DNA of 33,498 nucleotides from assembly GCF_001194135.2 (NCBI RefSeq), contig NC_068983.1:82098965-82132462 (forward strand), given 5' to 3'. The stretch's first letter is position 1; each line of letters opens with the position of its first letter. Source of the DNA: Octopus bimaculoides. Its lineage: Eukaryota. Below are positions 24,229 through 33,498 of this stretch, in pieces. A model generated the notes under the pieces. That model was not told where the DNA came from, made no database searches, and saw only the letters and a list, made by a program, of their open reading frames with translations. Both the position numbers and the translations under genes were made by a program.

Positions 24229-25790
24229 CTTCTGTCATATTGTGGGTTCTTATTTCTTTGTCCTTGGGATTATCCTTCCGGCGGATTTTATTATAGAGTA
24301 TCCTAGCTACAACGTCATGTCTCATCGTTAGATGATACCATGATGACATTTTCGGACAACTGCTTATGATATGGGTGATATCTTCACACAAAGTCTGCAT
24401 CAGTTGTCACATTTTACAGCTTTACCTGCATCACTATCCCTTTTGTGCTTGGTTGATATTTCCTGTTCCTGGATTGCAAATGCATACCCTTCAAAGTGGG
24501 AGGTAGTAATCTGGCTATTGGTCCATGATAAACTGCTTTGATGATCTGTTACTATCATCACAGAGCTTTCTACTAACGTATCTATGCACAGTCTTCTGCT
24601 CATATAGGATCATCCTTTCATCTGATGATATGTTGCGGTAGAGTTCTGCAACTTCTTTGGGCATGTATTCTAGGTTATCAGACAAAGAGTGTTGCTTAAA
24701 GAGCTGCCTTCCAAGTCTTATGATGTTATCAGCCTCATGTATACAAACTTGGTCAAGGGATGCATTTCTACATTTGGTGGTTAAAAGATGTTGCCGAAGG
24801 GATATGATGCAACATTCAAAGGTATTTTGGATTAATGTTAAGCCTCTTCCACCTTGTTTTCGTTTTAAGTAGAGGTGGTCTACATCACGGTTTATGTGGA
24901 AATTATGTGTGCTCGTTTGTATTTTTTGAGTTTTCACATCAATGGCTCGAATCTCATCAAGCATCCAATCAAGCAGCCCAAATGATGGTATGAATACTGG
25001 CACTGCAAACACATTGTGGGCCACTGTTTTATTGAATGCAGAGAGCTCTGTCTGCCAGTATGTAGGTTCATCACACTGTTGTAAATACTCATCACCAATT
25101 TCGTTAACAGCTTTTAATACCGTATCTGGTGGGTTTTTTTGTTTTTTTACTTACTTTGGTAGAGAATACTCTTTCCTCGAGAGAGTCCTTCAAAGCCAAA
25201 GTTATTTTTCCTCCGAAAATAACAGTAAGGACACATTTCACTGACATATAATCCTGACTGCCACTACTACTACTACAATAATCGTTGCTGTTACGCCTGC
25301 TATTTACCATAATCGTAGTAGGGGGACAGTGGTCAATTACTTGAACCAGTAATGTAGTTTGGCTGGCAGGCACTATAGAATCTGTTGGAATGTCACTAGT
25401 TGCGAAACCAGGTAGTGGTCTTATATCATTCACGCTTTGTTTGTAGAGTTTGGAACAAGATTAATTTTCAATTTCTTAATAAAGTTACAGTTACTAACCT
25501 TCTTTCTATGTTCTACAAATGTTGCTTGTTGGCGTAGTCGCTTTGCAGTAAAAAGATTTAATTCTGGATGCAGATCGTCCCAGTATGATTTCAATCGTTT
25601 CATATAACCAACAGTGGGATTTTGTTTCGCTTTTTCGAGGCACTTAAATAGATCATTATTCAATTCATAACTCTAAGAGAAATGAATTTTGTAGAAAGAA
25701 TTTGTTTACCTGTTGAGCTGTTGTTTTCGTTCTGTTCCTCGATTGTGTTGTACTTCATGTTGTGTCCAGCCATGTTGCTTGTAATAACTT
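24229..25790 (-). mobile_element. R4/Dong-like RLE-type LINE retaining its N-terminus but lacking RT
   Basis: N-terminal NPTVGYMKRLKSYWD...RLRQQA, then directly the post-RT FAVPVFIPSFGLLDW...LYLKRKQGGRGL, FEGYAFAIQEQEI and the CCHC-type EDITHIISSCPKMS...MRHDVVARIL. These are motifs typical of the R4 clade; the element is frameshifted. Confidence 0.85.
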
Positions 25791-25852
25791 TCTACATGGA
25801 CTCACACACAAGTATAAAAATATACGTGCACACATATGTATGGCTTTATATA

Positions 25853-26110
25853 GGCGTGGCTCTGTGGTAAGAAGCTTGCTTTCCAGCCACATGGTTCTGG
25901 GTTCAATCCCACTAGATGACACCTTGGCAATGGTCTTCTACTATAACATCGGGCTGACCAAAACCTTGTGAGTGAATTTGGTAGGCAAAAACTGAAAGAA
26001 GCCCGTCGCATATATATATATATATATATATATGTATATGTATATCTATGTGTATATGTATGCATATCTATGTGTCTGTATTTGCCCCCCCCCACACACA
26101 CACACATCAC
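25853..26110 (+). mobile_element. Family A SINE, 5' half, running into a gap
   Basis: ggcgtggctctgtggtaagaagcttgc...gggttcaatccc...ctgaaagaagcccgtcg. Confidence 0.88.
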
Positions 26111-26590: not shown

Positions 26591-26632
<42 letters not shown>

Positions 26633-27780
26633 TCTCACATATATACATTGCCATAAGTAATACAAACTATATAGTACAGAAAAGAAACATTTACTATATC
26701 AGTGTATATTTTATATGTTTAAAGCATATTATTGTCTTGATGTCAAATTAAACCAAGAAATATATATCATGTTCTCGGCATGATATCTCGAATATCAAAC
26801 TTCAAGTAGATTGCACATGTTTCATATGTTTTATATATACTGCGGTGAAACAAATTTTTTGATATTCATGCTGTGTTGGTGTGCTCGGAGTTTCATATCA
26901 GGTGTCAATCTTATACTGATATGCAAATGCGCATACCCTCATGTGAATAATGTACTCTCAACAAAGGGGTGATCAGAGTTAACCGAACTAATAAAGCCTG
27001 AAATCGCATTAAACTTGGTTAACTTTGATAATCATGTTACGATTGCAACAACTTAGGGTATATTTCATGTTTTTAATGGAACAGTAAAACTATATTCTTT
27101 TACTCTTGAGCTGATACTCACGTAGTCACTTGACCTCCTAGAAATAGCAGATAAATCAAACCTTACAGTCGTAAAATATTGGTTAACATAGTTTAGAAAA
27201 GATATATATATATATGTAACGATAGATTTTGTGTAGGTACTAATTGTAACGGGTGAGATTGATTAGGTACACAATAATATGACAAGTCGGAGTCAGCAGT
27301 TGTAACGATAAAAATTTTTTGTTATAACGGCAAGTTGTAAGATGTGAAAGATGGACAATGAATGAAGTTTTGAAGGAAGTATTTATTTACCGTTACATTA
27401 CAATACCTTGCCTCGACGGGCAGGTTATGATAAAATCCAAAAGCACGCGAAGTAAAGTCTGTGTTTGTGTCCTCTTCATTGTTTAGTAGTAATTACAGAG
27501 AGAGAGAGAGAGAATGATGTTGTAAGAGAATAGAATTAGAGCTAGTGAGAGTTGTAGGGTGTGGGACGTTGTCTCACAGTTTCTGACAATAAACTTCATT
27601 TCTCTTTCTAACCAAGGTTCTAGCTGGTCAGCCAGACTTCGTTGTCACCGAAGTGACTAACACGTTGAGTCGTCACCGACTGGTGACTAACTGATTTTTG
27701 CTTGGGGTGTTCTTGCTTTTATAACTATCTAGAAGGATAGACATATAATTGAGAACAATAGATTTAGTTGGTGGTCTTAC

Positions 27781-28017
27781 CATTGTTCCACCGTGGGAAA
27801 AGTTCTGTTGCAGTGTTAATTTAAATTTGGTAATGGTGGATCGAATCCACTTCATGCATGCAAGATCCACTATATAAGTCAGTAAATAGTGGGGTTGTGT
27901 TAACCGCACGTGGAGAAATAATAGGAAAATGAAAATAATAATAAGGCAGAATGCTAAACTGAAAGCATATTTTAATATAGATGTGTAAAAAGGATTTCTA
28001 ACCGGCTTTCCTTGCAT
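27781..28017 (-). CDS. Candidate first coding exon of an unidentified type II (signal-anchor) membrane protein, 79 aa
   Basis: TTGCCATGC start context. Encodes MQGKPVRNPFYTSILK-YAFSLAFCLIIIFIFLLFLHV-RLTQPHYLL...SHGGTM, i.e. a basic N-tail plus one hydrophobic helix. It ends at a canonical ATG|GTAAG donor in phase 0. The unspliced ORF runs 114 aa to 27673. No family recognised. Confidence 0.5.
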
Positions 28018-28281
28018 GGCAAATTTTCAACAAGAGGGACAATGAAAATGTTTTTTACAAAAAAGTGAAAAATAATATATAAAAAAATAAATATACCAAT
28101 ACATTATATTGTCTTTAAGCTTTTAAAGTTCAATGGTAATCCATGTAGATAATAATTGGAAAAAATAGGATGCATGAAATTGAGAGTTGTGTTTGGTTTA
28201 AAAAGCTAAAAGTTTATGTGTTAAGCAGGAAGTGTGGTGTCAAAAGCGGGAAGTGTGTGTAAGGGAAGACAATTCTGTGGG

Positions 28282-28288
28282 TTTTATA
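28282..28288 (-). promoter_or_regulatory. Candidate TATA box (TATAAAA) facing the 28017 exon
   Basis: gagTATAAAAccc on the minus strand, ~265 nt upstream of the ATG. Motif match only. Confidence 0.35.
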
Positions 28289-28402
28289 CTCTTTAGTTTG
28301 AGTTCTGGACTTATTAACACACAAACCCCTCAGTGACCATATTTCTCTAAGAACAGACATAAACTTCCTGTTGACAAAGAGTCCAGAATTCCAACTAAAG
28401 AG

Positions 28403-28409
28403 TATAAAA
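28403..28409 (+). promoter_or_regulatory. Mirror-image candidate TATA box in the right arm
   Basis: The identical gagTATAAAAccc context occurs on the plus strand because of the inverted duplication. Confidence 0.3.
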
Positions 28410-29594
28410 CCCACAGAATTGTCTTCCCTTACACGCACTTCGTGTTTTGACACCACACTTCCTGCTTAACGCATAAACTTTCAGCTTTTTAAACCAAATA
28501 CAACTTTCGATTTCATGCATCCTAATTTTTCCAACTATTATCTACATGGATTACCATTGAACTTTAAAAGCTCAAAGACAATATAATGTATTGGTATATT
28601 TATTTTTTTATATATTATTTTTTATATATTATTTTTCACTTTTTTGTAAAAATACGTTTTCATTCTCCCTCTTCTTGAAAATTTTTTATTTTTTAAATTT
28701 TTTCTGCCCCTTAAACTTTAATAAACCCATTATTATAAACTATATAGATCCTATACTAATTCTTTACATTATAAAAATTAAGCTTACCTTTTATGCGTCT
28801 TTAAAATATATATTAGCTTAAATTTTTTTTAATAATTTTTTTTTTTAAATAATTCAAAATAGTTTTCTGAGCCCAATATATATAATAGTCTTAAACTTTA
28901 CACCTTATCTATAGCCTTTGAATTCAAAATTGACACTACTTCAGGTTTTTTGTATAAACTAATTACATTTTATTATTAACAATTTTATTATTAACACACT
29001 TCTTATTATTAACATATTAATTAAGCTAATATTGATAGCTATAAATTTCCCATACTTAGTATATGTATAACAATACTGATGCTTTATTCAGACTAAAGAA
29101 AAAGTCCTGTTGACCTAAATGGTTAATTCCCCAACATTATGATAGCAGTAAAACCCCAACCTAAAATAGTGTTGCCACTCTGACCAGAGAAACCTTTATA
29201 ACTATATCCGTGTATAATGCTTACACCTTCCTTTTCCTTAGAAGGGATTGCCCCTTATACTATTATCACAAGATAAGAGACAATAAAATCAGAGACAGTT
29301 TGAATTCTACCTGAAACTAATTACTAGCCTTGGCTATGTCAAGATGGATTTTTATGTATTCTTCTTCCCACTTGGATTTTAAATGTTGCCACAATTATAA
29401 TATGTCTATTCTACTGTAATTTTTCTACATTTTTGTGCAGCTGAAGATTGCTCTACATATTGCATTTAATGTAATGCTTGCATTACTTAAATAAATGGAG
29501 TAGCATGAAACGTGCGTACTGCAATCATCTTTTAAAATCCGTGTTACTTATCTTGATGTGTATATATATATCGAGAGAGAGAGAGAGAGAGCAC

Positions 29595-29875
29595 TTCTCT
29601 GTCTCTCGGAAGATGAAGCTCCACATCTACAATGCATCGATCCTCTCCATTATCCATTATCTTCTATAGAGCAGAAAAGTCCCCACCCCACTCGAAGATC
29701 CTAGGAAAGAGAATCGATAGTTTCGATGGCAGAGCCCTGGGAACCATCGCCAACATCAGATGGTACCATTCACGTTTTCAACATAGATCTGCGTGCACGC
29801 ACACAACTGCCCGTAGCATCCCACCTCGTAGCTATCTGTCGCATGCACTTGTACGGACACAATTAAGTCCACGAA
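29595..29875 (+). mobile_element. Decayed RTE-like LINE C-terminal fragment
   Basis: KMKLHIYNASILS..., KILGKRIDSFDGRALGTIANIRWYH, and after a frameshift NIDLRARTQLPVASHLVAICRMHLYGH, which matches the post-RT LRxILxIxWxDxVxN...RLRWxGH region. Confidence 0.75.
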
Positions 29876-30559
29876 ATATTTATTACAATGCGCTTTTGCT
29901 TGAGATGTGAGCTCAGGAGATAATGGAAAGGAACATAAAATACTGGGAAATATTCTGCTCGCCTCTTTGATGTTTCTTCTCCCCACCAACCTACATGTGT
30001 ATGTGTTTGTATACGTATGCATATGTATGCATGTGTGTATGTGTATATCTTGTGTCTAGGAAGGGTCATTATGCCAGTAAAAATTAAATAATCACACACA
30101 CTGATTCAATAACACTTCTTTATTTTACTAACTAGTCAAATGCCTAAGTGTGTAGATGTGTGTACGTATGCATTCATGTAAGTATATATGCATGTATGTA
30201 TGTGTGTATATGTGTGGGTGTGCGTATGCATGCATTCATGTAAGTATATATGCATGTATGTGTGTGTATGTAGAGGTGTGAGCGTCTACTTACGTGTGCG
30301 CGCTCCGGTTTGTTTGCGCATATGCATGTATGTGTGCGCGTGTGTATGTATGTATGTAGTGCCATTGTTGTTTTTAAATTAGGTAGGCGTCTGTGCGTAT
30401 GTCTGGAGAAAATGGAATGCGTTGGGGAGACTTCTAGGAGTTTAGCTGAGAAGATAAACGAAACTCTGGCGTGAGTATCACGACAGGAAACAATCGTCGA
30501 TACTCTACCAACATACCAAACATCAACATAGCGGCATACTGAATCAACAAATGGATGTA

Positions 30560-30650
30560 TTAGTATAACGCTCGGGAATAGAGAAAGTCTTTAACGTTTC
30601 GAGCCTACGCTCTTCAACAGAAAGAAACAAGGAGAGAAAAAAATATGTGT
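30560..30650 (+). mobile_element. Possible Penelope-like terminal fragment
   Basis: aacgtttcgagcctacgctcttcaacagaaag resembles the ...CGAAACGT... terminal motif of Penelope-like elements. Short, and assigned from recollection. Confidence 0.4.
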
Positions 30651-33498
30651 AGCGCTCAAATGATTCGAACTTAAATTCCGATGTCTACGAAGGTCCAATT
30701 CCGTGGGCGGTAAAGAGTAGTTATAATAGGAATGTAGGAGAGCAGACACGGGGTATATTACACGGATAAACAAGTTAAATATAACAATATTAAGTGTTAC
30801 TGAGTTATACATGATCTGGGCGAATCTTTGCATGTGTATGTANNNNNNNNNNNNNNNNNNNNNNNNNNNNNNNNNNNNNNNNNNNNNNNNNNNNNNNNNN
30901 NNNNNNNNNNNNNNNNNNNNNNNNNNNNNNNNNNNNNNNNNNNNNNNNNNNNNNNNNNNNNNNNNNNNNNNNNNNNNNNNNNNNNNNNNNNNNNNNNNNN
31001 NNNNNNNNNNNNNNNNNNNNNNNNNNNNNNNNNNNNNNNNNNNNNNNNNNNNNNNNNNNNNNNNNNNNNNNNNNNNNNNNNNNNNNNNNNNNNNNNNNNN
31101 NNNNNNNNNNNNNNTATATGCATGCATGTATATACGTGTATGTTGAAAAATGGTTTTACTCTTGTGTGAAATGTATTTACGAAGTTACTTAGAACTACAC
31201 ATTAGAGTTGAATAATGCTACTTATTCAAAACAATATTTGCATAAGCTGCTAATCGGAGAGTTCTTCGTTTCCAATCTACAGGTGAAGGGGCGCTGTAGT
31301 TTCTGAAACTTTCTTATATATCCATCGGGTAGATACCCTCAGACATCCCTGGAAACAACTTCTTCGGAGATTACAGCTCTCAATGGAGGACAAGCATCAT
31401 TTTAAAAGGAAAACAAGCCCCTCCCACCAAGAAAAAAAAAACACGGAATGACAGTGTTAATTCCATTGGGTTCACTTTACAGCATTGAAACTTGATTCTC
31501 TCTGGCATCACTTGCACGATGTTGAGAATATACCACCAGCATTGGTCAAACGATCTTAACATCAGATTCAGAATTCATCCTAGGCTGGCGCCACGTACTA
31601 TTCGTCCTCTAAACAATTCAGGCTCATAACAGATAAATTCACTGCAATATAATTTCTCTTCCCCGATAGGCCCTGCAGCCCCAAAACAAATCAAAGAAGA
31701 AAAAGATTTCATTACCTTCAAAACGAAACCTGGTCAAATTTCTGCGAGGGATACCAGATAAGCCATCTATACCTGGATACATCTCAGTCAATAACAACTC
31801 CCTACTTGAATGGGCCATTATACCACGAAGCTTGGCTTTAAAATGACTTAACAAATACTATCAGGTGATGCTATTAAGTTATACATGATCTGGGCTAATC
31901 TTTGACCGAAGCATGTCTAAGTTAGCTAAGTTGAACACTATGGTTGACCTAACTGACTTATCACCTTCCCTGTAATTGTTGGCTTTAACATGGCCATTGC
32001 AGGTGTCATAATTTTAATATAAAATTGGGCGTGCATGAACATATGGGTACCTAAATCTTTGAATATATACATACGTTAATAACTCAATATATGATATAAA
32101 TCAAATGTTCTAAGTATGATAACGTTATAACGATAACTTTTGAGATATGGTTGTGCTGGTCATGGCTAACGAGACGATTAGTGAAGAATGCAGCGTTTAG
32201 GATCCGAGATACTGTGTATGGGACTTTTTTATGCTAAAACATATACGAGTTAAAGTATATGTATTACTGGTGTTGAAAGGTATTTTATGAATATAATGAT
32301 ATGTAAAAGACATAGATACTGTGTTGTCTTGGCTGCGTTATCTATTAGATATTAACTCTCAGTTTGTTTCGAAGTGTGTACTTTTACGTAGGTACTTGAA
32401 CCTGTACATATGAGATAAAAGCTTTTAAATTCAAATTTGTCTCAGGGTGGATTATTAAGTTGATTTTCTCTGTTGCGTGCATGATATAAATGCCGGTTTT
32501 CGTGTCTATATCTTTCTACTTGAATTTATATCTCGTAACGCTTGACCGTTTAATGAACAGACGTACTTGGATAAGCTAGTAGCAGCTCTTCTAGTTAATT
32601 ATAAGAAGAGGAGGGAATATTGGTAGAATCTTGATTTGTTAAGTTGATATAGGATATGGTTGTAGCGTTTATTAATGAAGACATGCTTAGTCAGAACTTA
32701 TTTTTAGACATATATAGTCAAATGGATACTTGTGTGGGTTGAGACAGTTGTATATTTGGAGGGGGTCACGGTATTGTATCATTTATATTTTTGACATACG
32801 TATATCTATATCTCTTTATATCTACTAACCGTTATTTTAAAAATACTTAATAGCGTTCTGTTTATCTTTTATGCAGTCATCAAAATTGTTATAAGTAAAA
32901 GAATTTGAATAACATCTGCGTTCAACTCCATTTATTTACTTATACTATACAAATTAATGCACATTAACCCGGAGTTTCTACTTTTGAATAGGTCACTACA
33001 TCCTTTCGCGAATTTTGCTACCCTGGTAAATGTTTATTGAATTTTCCGTGTTAGCTGTAAACAAAGGATAATTCAGTCATCCATTTATATATATATGTAA
33101 GGGACGACCGTGCGAACTCATAAAAGGAGAAATGGTGACGAATGGAAAAACAGAGGACTCCTTTTATTTAAACGTGTCACACGGTCGAACATACAATTAT
33201 ATATCAAAGATGATGATATACATGATATGTTATACGACGATAACATAGATGACCAGTAATGAAAGACCACAACCGTATAAGATGAATAACAGAGATATTT
33301 ATTGTAGCGTTAAAGATGTATGTCTGTGTGTGAGTGTGAATGCGACATATAAGAACATAATCAAAGACAGGCCGTCATACAAAGAAAAGTGTGTATGTTA
33401 GTGATACATGTGTGAGTTATTACAGCAGATAGAAAGAGTGAGTAAATGACACGTGAGCAATTATACCAGTTCGTTAGTACACTATAGGAAAAGTTCTG

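What the first reader, a model, noticed from the sequence alone, without database searches (positions are those of the whole stretch)
28021..28684. 664-bp foldback whose end falls 3 nt before a candidate start codon
Seen: 291/305-bp inverted arms of unique-looking sequence, ~94% identical, around a 68-nt spacer. The left arm read on the minus strand continues ...GAAAATTT-GCC-ATG, whereas the right arm stops at ...GAAAATTT. There is no target-site duplication and no recognisable transposon end. Inference: a local inverted duplication copied the gene's leader but not its ORF. Any transcript starting upstream of 28684 would fold into a ~290-bp duplex next to the AUG. In a coleoid cephalopod with abundant ADAR editing (established knowledge) that could act as an editing substrate, a hairpin-siRNA source or a translational brake.
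Basis: partly seen in the sequence, partly recalled or inferred. Interest (0 to 1): 0.75.

Follow-up and report, generated by a model that had tools for sequence, protein, structure and literature searches.

The report
Non-coding 664-bp foldback, probably transposon-derived
The 664-base inverted repeat is real and would fold into a very long hairpin if transcribed, but nothing shows that a gene lies beside it, so it is most likely an ordinary foldback-type repeat in repeat-rich non-coding DNA.

Summary
The structure is exactly as described. The arms are 28021-28311 and 28380-28684, with a 68-nt spacer. They match at 274 of 290 aligned bases (94.5%) and differ by three indels. The predicted RNA hairpin is -417 kcal/mol (z = -44). 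It is not an assembly artefact, because artefacts give identical arms.

The "candidate start codon" opens a 114-aa ORF. That ORF has no relative among 1.84 billion representative proteins and no Pfam domain. It shows no codon-position signal, and its length recurs in about 10% of composition-matched simulations. There is no evidence that the arm is a gene's leader.

"No target-site duplication" is also unsafe. The outermost arm bases are palindromic and hide a perfect 6-bp candidate (AAATTT) or a 7/8 8-bp candidate. Such a signal arises by chance about 10-12% of the time.

Copy number, the decisive test, could not be measured because no eukaryotic genome was reachable. There is no other copy in the window.

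My best reading, at 0.5, is a foldback/MITE-like non-autonomous DNA transposon copy. A one-off local inverted duplication is at 0.33.

Transcription, ADAR editing and siRNA production were untestable. Interest is low.

The parts
28021..28311 (.). Left arm of the foldback (291 nt, 29% GC).
   Evidence: inverted match to 28380-28684, 274/290 identical. Only 1 CpG where 4.8 are expected.
28312..28379 (.). Unique 68-nt spacer, the loop of the hairpin.
   Evidence: no complementarity across it. In the predicted fold it forms the terminal loop region.
28380..28684 (.). Right arm of the foldback (305 nt, 28.5% GC).
   Evidence: It keeps 5 CpG (5.2 expected). Four of these are TpG in the left arm.
28595..28636 (.). 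Subterminal 14-nt tandem repeat (TATATATTATTTTT, about 2.9 copies). One extra unit (28623-28636) is the 14-nt indel between the arms.
   Evidence: searches (Tandem Repeats Finder; family D3) and the gap list.
28020..28027 (.). Left copy of the candidate hidden target-site duplication: CAAATTTT, or AAATTT at 28021-28026.
   Evidence: AAATTT matches 6/6 with 28679-28684. CAAATTTT matches AAAATTTT 7/8 with 28678-28685. A signal this good occurs in 0.10-0.12 of simulated inverted-repeat ends, so it is weak evidence.
28678..28685 (.). Right copy of the candidate hidden target-site duplication: AAAATTTT, or AAATTT at 28679-28684.
   Evidence: as for the left copy.
27673..28017 (-). I judge it a chance ORF and not part of the element.
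   Evidence: or 11 (ORF), (no Pfam domain; no homologues; length reached in 9-10% of simulations; no codon-position signal).

Best explanation
The locus is a real, fairly young, non-coding 664-bp near-perfect palindrome in AT-rich, repeat-dense and apparently gene-free DNA.

Most likely it is one copy of a foldback-type non-autonomous DNA transposon, that is, a MITE-like element with very long terminal inverted repeats. The element proper would span about 28027/28028 to 28677/28678. It would have inserted into an AAATTT / AAAATTTT target. That target is palindromic, so its duplication reads as the outermost bases of the arms.

After insertion the two arms diverged by ordinary neutral mutation: transitions, CpG decay and one microsatellite slippage.

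Shown: the structure, its non-artefactual nature, its lack of coding capacity, and the absence of a demonstrable neighbouring gene.

Inferred: the transposon origin.

No host function is implied. If an RNA happened to read through both arms, it would form a duplex of about 290 bp, the ordinary kind of repeat-derived ADAR substrate.
For: - Size (664 bp), AT-richness (29% GC), sharp symmetric ends and almost full-length inverted arms around a short loop.
- No ORF with any homologue inside it.
- The terminal hexamer AAATTT is palindromic. It gives a perfect 6-bp or a 7/8 8-bp target-site duplication candidate, seen in only 10-12% of simulated ends.
- There is a subterminal short tandem repeat.
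- The surroundings are repeat-dense. There are 8 copies of a tRNA-derived SINE, a Tc1/mariner relic, a truncated retroelement, and a second small palindrome with 41-bp inverted ends at 2318-2477.
- Arm differences look neutral: 11 transitions to 5 transversions, and no significant bias towards G:U pairs on either strand.
- TIR elements and MITE families are documented in octopus genomes (PMC13282606), if the window is from one.
Against: - No second copy was found: not in the 33.5-kb window by blastn with word size 7 or nhmmer --max, and not in the metagenome, prokaryote-genome or viral collections. Those collections are not expected to hold this organism.
- The target-site duplication candidate is only weakly significant (p about 0.1).
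- The ends (TCAAC.../CAAC...) match no transposon superfamily that I could test.
- No related autonomous element was identified.
Confidence: 0.5

Rival explanations
1. A one-off local inverted duplication. A replication template switch or fold-back repair event copied about 300 bp of unique sequence in reverse orientation, 68 bp away. The element is single-copy in the genome.
For: - The arms look unique. No other copy, even a diverged one, exists in the window, whereas the true dispersed repeat of this window occurs 8 times.
- The arm pair (94.5% identical) is more similar than any pair of SINE copies in the window (70-88%).
- There is no recognisable transposon terminus.
Against: - Neither junction shows microhomology. 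This is from reading: 28379|28380 and 28684|28685 have 0 nt.
- The palindromic AAATTT end has no explanation under this model other than chance (about 10%).
- From general knowledge, transposon-derived palindromes of this size far outnumber unique inverted duplications in repeat-rich animal genomes.
Confidence: 0.33
2. Two independent head-to-head insertions of the same interspersed repeat of about 300 bp, 68 bp apart. This would resemble the inverted SINE pair at 17926-18320 / 18821-19178 in this window.
For: - Both arms start and stop at the same positions of the shared sequence.
- The window does contain one such inverted SINE pair.
Against: - No further copy of the arm sequence exists in the window. 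The family would therefore be too sparse for two copies to land 68 bp apart by chance.
- Neither arm is individually flanked by a direct repeat (reading).
- There is no poly-A or microsatellite tail and no tRNA-like head.
Confidence: 0.08
3. A functional hairpin next to a real, lineage-specific gene. The foldback would lie in the 5' leader of an orphan 114-aa membrane protein and act as an ADAR substrate, an siRNA source or a translational brake.
For: - The ORF starts 3 nt from the arm end in a GCCATG context.
- An ATG-ORF of at least 114 codons beginning within 10 codons of an inverted-repeat end is rare a priori, about 4e-4 per end in simulation.
- The duplex potential is extreme.
Against: - The ORF has no homologue anywhere, no domain and no codon-position signal.
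- It lies on a G-poor strand, which lowers stop-codon density.
- The coincidence was selected after the fact from a scan of many windows.
- Arm mismatches do not favour G:U pairs on the minus-strand RNA, 3 against 8 on the plus strand. There is therefore no sign of selection on that hairpin.
- A survey of mollusc small RNAs that included Octopus bimaculoides found Dicer processing of long dsRNA elusive (PMC12479628).
Confidence: 0.05
4. An assembly artefact, such as a chimeric palindromic read or a mis-join in a draft, gap-rich scaffold.
For: The window is a draft scaffold with 8 runs of N.
Against: - The arms differ at 16 positions plus three indels, whereas artefactual foldbacks have identical arms.
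- The foldback lies 1.4 kb or more from the nearest gap, inside a contiguous 4.25-kb block (26591-30842).
Confidence: 0.03

Closest known systems
Foldback-type DNA transposons and long-TIR MITEs, for example Drosophila FB and Galileo (P superfamily, 7-9 bp target duplications) and the palindromic non-autonomous elements of nematodes and other invertebrates. Named from memory.
   Same: - Under 800 bp and AT-rich, with no coding capacity.
- The arms make up almost the whole element around a short loop.
- It has a subterminal short tandem repeat.
- It has a candidate 6-8 bp target duplication.
   Different: - No second copy could be shown.
- The termini match no family I could test.
- The arms are not built from long arrays of subrepeats, as in classic FB elements.
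Hairpin-RNA (hpRNA) endo-siRNA loci of Drosophila and young plant MIRNA genes, both formed by inverted duplication of a gene fragment. From established knowledge.
   Same: A long, near-perfect inverted duplication with a short loop, capable of forming a duplex of several hundred bp.
   Different: - No parental or target gene is identifiable.
- Neither transcription nor small RNAs are testable here.
- Long-dsRNA dicing appears weak in molluscs (PMC12479628).
Repeat-derived dsRNA made by nearby inverted repeat pairs, the main substrate of ADAR hyper-editing across metazoans (PMC9989829).
   Same: Two inverted copies lie within 100 nt of each other and have strong predicted pairing.
   Different: The arms here are not copies of an abundant family such as the window's SINE. 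There is no evidence that the locus lies inside a transcript.
Rfam RF04120, the MIR5998 microRNA precursor.
   Same: Both are long perfect hairpins. cmscan gives 72.8 bits on one strand and 70.8 on the other.
   Different: - The score is far below the family's gathering score of 180.
- The two strands score about equally.
- The alignment rests on stem geometry, not on sequence. This is a generic long-hairpin match, not membership.

Membership tests
MITE / foldback non-autonomous DNA transposon | Terminal inverted repeats with sharp ends | tested here: met
   arms of 291 and 305 nt. The inverted repeat stops abruptly at 28021 and 28684.
MITE / foldback non-autonomous DNA transposon | Small size (under about 800 bp) and no coding capacity | tested here: met
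   The element is 664 bp. Its internal ORFs of 80 aa or less have no Pfam domain or homologue.
MITE / foldback non-autonomous DNA transposon | Target-site duplication flanking the inverted repeats | tested here: inconclusive
   AAATTT matches 6/6, or CAAATTTT/AAAATTTT matches 7/8, hidden in the palindromic arm ends. A signal this good has a chance frequency of 0.10-0.12.
MITE / foldback non-autonomous DNA transposon | Multiple dispersed copies in the genome | not testable with these tools
   No eukaryotic genome is reachable. There are 0 extra copies in the 33.5-kb window and 0 in the metagenome, prokaryote and viral scans.
MITE / foldback non-autonomous DNA transposon | Termini shared with an autonomous transposase-bearing element | not tested
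   The only transposase relic in the window (Tc1/mariner HTH, 3426-3890) is 24 kb away. I did not compare it with the arm ends.
5' leader hairpin of a protein-coding gene | A real coding sequence immediately downstream | tested here: not met
   ORF114 has no homologues, no domain and no codon-position signal. Its length is reached in 9-10% of simulations.
5' leader hairpin of a protein-coding gene | Transcription start upstream of the hairpin | not testable with these tools
   No expression data are available.
hpRNA / endo-siRNA hairpin locus | Long inverted repeat able to form an intramolecular duplex | tested here: met
   -417 kcal/mol, z = -44.
hpRNA / endo-siRNA hairpin locus | 21-23-nt small RNAs from the arms and a target gene homologous to them | not testable with these tools
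   There are no small-RNA data and no genome. No homologous sequence exists in the window.
ADAR hyper-editing substrate | Clustered A-to-G mismatches between RNA and DNA over the arms | not testable with these tools
   No RNA-seq data. The DNA-level differences between the arms show no one-strand A-to-G bias.
Rfam MIR5998 | Score at or above the family's gathering threshold (180 bits) | tested here: not met
   72.8 and 70.8 bits on the two strands.
Assembly artefact (palindromic chimera) | Arms identical apart from sequencing error | tested here: not met
   16 substitutions and 3 indels, including a 14-nt repeat unit.

The most novel reading that the evidence does not exclude
The foldback is a single-copy, lineage-specific inverted duplication that is transcribed together with the adjacent 114-codon ORF. 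It would act as a cis-regulatory dsRNA module, either an ADAR hyper-editing sink or a translational brake, for a young orphan membrane protein. The rarity of an ORF that long starting within 10 codons of a repeat end (about 4e-4 per end) is the only hint in its favour.
Probability: 0.04. Interest if true: 0.6.

Novelty: new member of a known kind. Interest (0 to 1): 0.18.

Why it matters
As it stands it matters little. Long inverted repeats of this size are a routine product of transposons and of replication errors in repeat-rich animal genomes. Nothing here ties this one to a gene.

It would matter in two cases. If genome-wide data showed it to be single-copy, transcribed and heavily edited next to an expressed ORF, it would be a clean natural example of a new cis-acting dsRNA element. 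If instead it belongs to a young foldback transposon family, about 3% from its ancestor per arm, that would point to recently active DNA transposons in this lineage.

Tried and rejected
1. Finding other copies through translated ORFs. A chimera of the 80-aa and 41-aa foldback ORFs gave no hit. The control chimera of ORF114 plus a SINE-derived ORF also found nothing, not even itself. The protein collection therefore holds no ORF calls from this genome's non-coding DNA, and these negatives say nothing about copy number.

2. Reaching the source or a sister genome through transposon proteins. A chimera of the retroelement and Tc1 ORFs returned only two ENA metagenome proteins at about 40% identity. 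Both sit on short contigs of 1.9 and 3.8 kb. This was a dead end.

I searched ORF114 alone instead.

4. Exact 23-24-mer scans of the arm found nothing: two against metagenome contigs, one against prokaryote genomes and one against viral contigs.

5. A full-text search of the paper library for arm and SINE k-mers returned 0 papers. The octopus repeat paper has no library held as text.

6. Rfam gave nothing at gathering thresholds. In E-value mode it gave a generic long-hairpin match to MIR5998 on both strands, which I rejected as membership. ARAGORN found no tRNA.

7. Selection for an RNA hairpin: G:U-compatible transitions are 8 on plus-strand RNA against 3 on minus-strand RNA. This is not significant and is partly explained by CpG decay in the left arm.

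8. Microhomology at the junctions expected from a template switch: none was seen.

9. I considered an integrated parvovirus-like terminal hairpin next to an ORF and dropped it. The ORF has no homologue, and the arms are much longer than such hairpins.

Full report
**Observation**

The feature is in the sequence as described. The left arm is 28021-28311 (291 nt) and the right arm is 28380-28684 (305 nt). A unique 68-nt spacer (28312-28379) separates them.

A global alignment of the left arm with the reverse complement of the right arm gives 274 identities in 290 aligned columns (94.5%). There are 16 mismatches, 11 transitions and 5 transversions, and three indels of 1, 14 and 1 nt. The Jukes-Cantor distance is 0.057. 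The 14-nt indel is one extra unit of a subterminal tandem repeat, TATATATTATTTTT, in the right arm.

On the minus strand the left arm runs ...GAAAATTT GCC ATG. The right arm stops at ...GAAAATTT and is followed by TTTATT.

Folded as RNA, the region is one continuous hairpin of -417 kcal/mol, against -132 +/- 6 for dinucleotide shuffles (z = -44). The plus strand folds slightly better than the minus strand, -421 against -413 kcal/mol. It is the longest and best-matched inverted repeat in the window.

**Is it an artefact?**

The window is a draft eukaryotic scaffold with eight runs of N, and about 32% G+C (35% with the N runs left out). The foldback lies inside a contiguous 4.25-kb block (26591-30842), at least 1.4 kb from any gap. 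The arms differ at 16 positions and by a repeat-unit indel. Palindromic chimeras and mis-joins give identical arms, so I treat the structure as real. I give the artefact reading 0.03.

**The neighbouring "start codon"**

The ATG opens a 114-aa ORF (27673-28017, minus strand). Five results argue that it is not a gene:

- It has no Pfam domain. The best hit is a 12.9-bit match to Strabismus, far below that family's cut-off.
- It has no hit in the word-indexed protein collection.
- It has no hit at E <= 0.001 in an exhaustive phmmer search of 1.84 billion representative proteins.
- Its codon positions carry no coding signal. G at position 1 is 0.12, and G+C is flat at 0.35/0.35/0.37. The decayed Tc1 transposase and retroelement ORFs of the same window still show G1 of 0.20-0.31.
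- The ORF lies on a G-poor strand, which thins out TAG and TGA stops. An ATG-ORF of at least 114 aa appears in 9-10% of second-order Markov simulations of the 4.25-kb block.

One point goes the other way. An ORF that long starting within 10 codons of a given inverted-repeat end is rare a priori, about 4e-4 per end. That coincidence was picked after the fact by a reader scanning many windows. A genome with many thousands of inverted repeats would supply several such cases. I rate the chance that ORF114 is a real gene at about 5-10%. The statement that the arm is "the gene's leader" is therefore not supported.

**Target-site duplication**

The outermost arm bases are palindromic.

- If the element proper starts at 28027, AAATTT (28021-28026) is repeated perfectly at 28679-28684.
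- If it starts at 28028, with ends 5'-CAACAAGAGGG / 5'-CAAGAAGAGGG, then CAAATTTT (28020-27) matches AAAATTTT (28678-85) at 7 of 8 positions.

In simulated inverted-repeat ends of the same composition, a signal this good appears in 10-12% of cases. This is weak support for transposition. Equally, a target-site duplication cannot be excluded.

**Copy number**

This is the decisive test, and I could not run it because no eukaryotic genome is reachable with these tools.

- Within the window there is no further copy of the arm, by blastn with word size 7 or by nhmmer --max with a profile of the two arms.
- As a yardstick, the window's tRNA-derived SINE occurs eight times at 70-88% identity.
- Exact 23-24-mer scans of the metagenome, prokaryote-genome and viral collections found nothing. 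That is expected for a metazoan sequence.
- Translated searches were uninformative, because the protein collection holds no ORF calls from this genome's non-coding DNA. The control query did not even find itself.
- Transposon-protein queries led only to short metagenome contigs.

**Mutation pattern**

The arm differences look neutral.

- Of the 11 transitions, 8 would be G:U pairs in plus-strand RNA and 3 in minus-strand RNA.
- Four transitions are CpG in the right arm against TpG in the left arm. The left arm has 1 CpG where 4.8 are expected, and the right arm has 5 where 5.2 are expected. This is suggestive of asymmetric CpG decay, but the numbers are too small to build on.
- There is no one-strand A-to-G bias that would point to an edited RNA intermediate.

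**What it most likely is**

The evidence is as follows:

- The element is 664 bp and AT-rich, with sharp symmetric ends.
- The arms occupy nearly the whole element, around a short loop.
- It has a subterminal tandem repeat and no coding capacity.
- Its terminal hexamer is palindromic.
- It sits among SINEs, a Tc1/mariner relic, a truncated retroelement and a second small palindrome with 41-bp inverted ends at 2318-2477.

On this evidence I favour a foldback-type non-autonomous DNA transposon copy, at 0.5. The arms do look unique, and they are more similar to each other than any SINE pair in the window. Against it, the expected junctions show no microhomology, and the palindromic end would have to be chance.

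Two independent head-to-head insertions (0.08) is unlikely, because no solitary copy is present in the window. A functional leader hairpin of a real orphan gene gets 0.05.

**How it would behave**

At the DNA level a 68-nt spacer and 5.5% arm divergence make the palindrome tolerable.

At the RNA level, any read-through transcript would form a duplex of about 290 bp. Across metazoans, including the Octopus bimaculoides data set, clustered hyper-editing of dsRNA made by nearby inverted repeats is the main class of ADAR activity (PMC9989829). A mollusc small-RNA survey that included O. bimaculoides found evidence for Dicer processing of long dsRNA "elusive" (PMC12479628). If the locus is transcribed in a cephalopod, passive hyper-editing is therefore more plausible than siRNA production. 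None of this is testable here.

**Comparison with known families**

- The closest kinds are foldback and long-TIR MITE elements, hpRNA or young-MIRNA inverted duplications, and generic inverted-repeat ADAR substrates.
- Rfam gives nothing at gathering thresholds.
- In E-value mode the central 168 nt hit the MIR5998 model at 72.8 and 70.8 bits on the two strands, far below the gathering score of 180. The alignment rests on stem geometry. This is a generic long-hairpin match, not membership.

**Origin and age**

I could not verify that the window comes from a coleoid cephalopod. Its composition, TA/TG microsatellites, dense tRNA-derived SINEs and draft gaps are compatible with that, but no tool result names the organism.

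If it is an octopus, a published calibration applies: JC 0.065 about 18 My and 0.09 about 25 My (PMC13282606). That puts the event at roughly 8 My, with 0.029 per arm. The same paper documents TIR elements and MITE families in Octopus vulgaris.

**Verdict**

This is an ordinary structural class, and interest is low unless genome-wide and expression data show it to be single-copy and transcribed.

Noticed in passing
window 1-335, 5185-5667, 9865-10314, 11429-11565, 17920-18346, 18821-19284, 23308-23743, 25813-26067: There are eight copies, some partial, of one tRNA-derived SINE of about 410 bp. Pairwise identity is 70-88%. On the reverse strand of the consensus the head reads ...GGCTGTGTGGTAAG...GGTTCTGGGTTCAGTCCCAC..., which looks like A and B boxes. 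An internal TA/TG microsatellite coincides with several assembly gaps. ARAGORN and Rfam do not call it.
   Followed up: partly
window 17926-18320 and 18821-19178: Two SINE copies lie head to head about 500 bp apart. They are 82% complementary over about 400 bp, with a 125-nt core at 94%. This is a second potential dsRNA-forming inverted pair in the same window, of the ordinary repeat-pair kind.
   Followed up: no
window 2318-2477: A small palindrome of about 160 bp with 41-bp inverted ends (AAATCCAAATTGAGGGAATAGAGTAGGTAAAATCCAGGCTA, 4 mismatches) around a unique core of about 75 bp. It has the shape of a MITE. I did not resolve its target-site duplication.
   Followed up: partly
window 22417-25693 (minus strand): A truncated, frame-broken retroelement. 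Its ORFs match residues 18-88 and 736-1007 of a 1140-aa reverse-transcriptase protein (P0001, Pfam RVT_1) and also match P0002, at 33-55% identity. The RT domain itself is missing.
   Followed up: partly
window 3183-3899 (minus strand): A Tc1/mariner transposase relic. HTH_Tnp_Tc3_2 scores 32.2 bits, just above its cut-off, and is followed by a DDE-like ...FSDDSRF... stretch with frame breaks.
   Followed up: no
window 7245-7412, 13616-13784, 13850-13973, 24084-24228: A second short interspersed family of about 130-170 bp, with four copies at 71-81% identity. It is unclassified.
   Followed up: no
window 28021-28311 versus 28380-28684: CpG content is asymmetric between the arms. The left arm has 1 CpG (4.8 expected) and the right arm has 5 (5.2 expected). 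Four of the 11 transitions are CpG in the right arm against TpG in the left arm. This may mean the two arms differ in methylation history, but the numbers are too small to be significant.
   Followed up: partly
window 6369-6613 and 12793-13046: An inverted pair of about 250-bp sequences, 82% identical and 6 kb apart. Both sit next to TA microsatellites, so this is probably another dispersed repeat.
   Followed up: no
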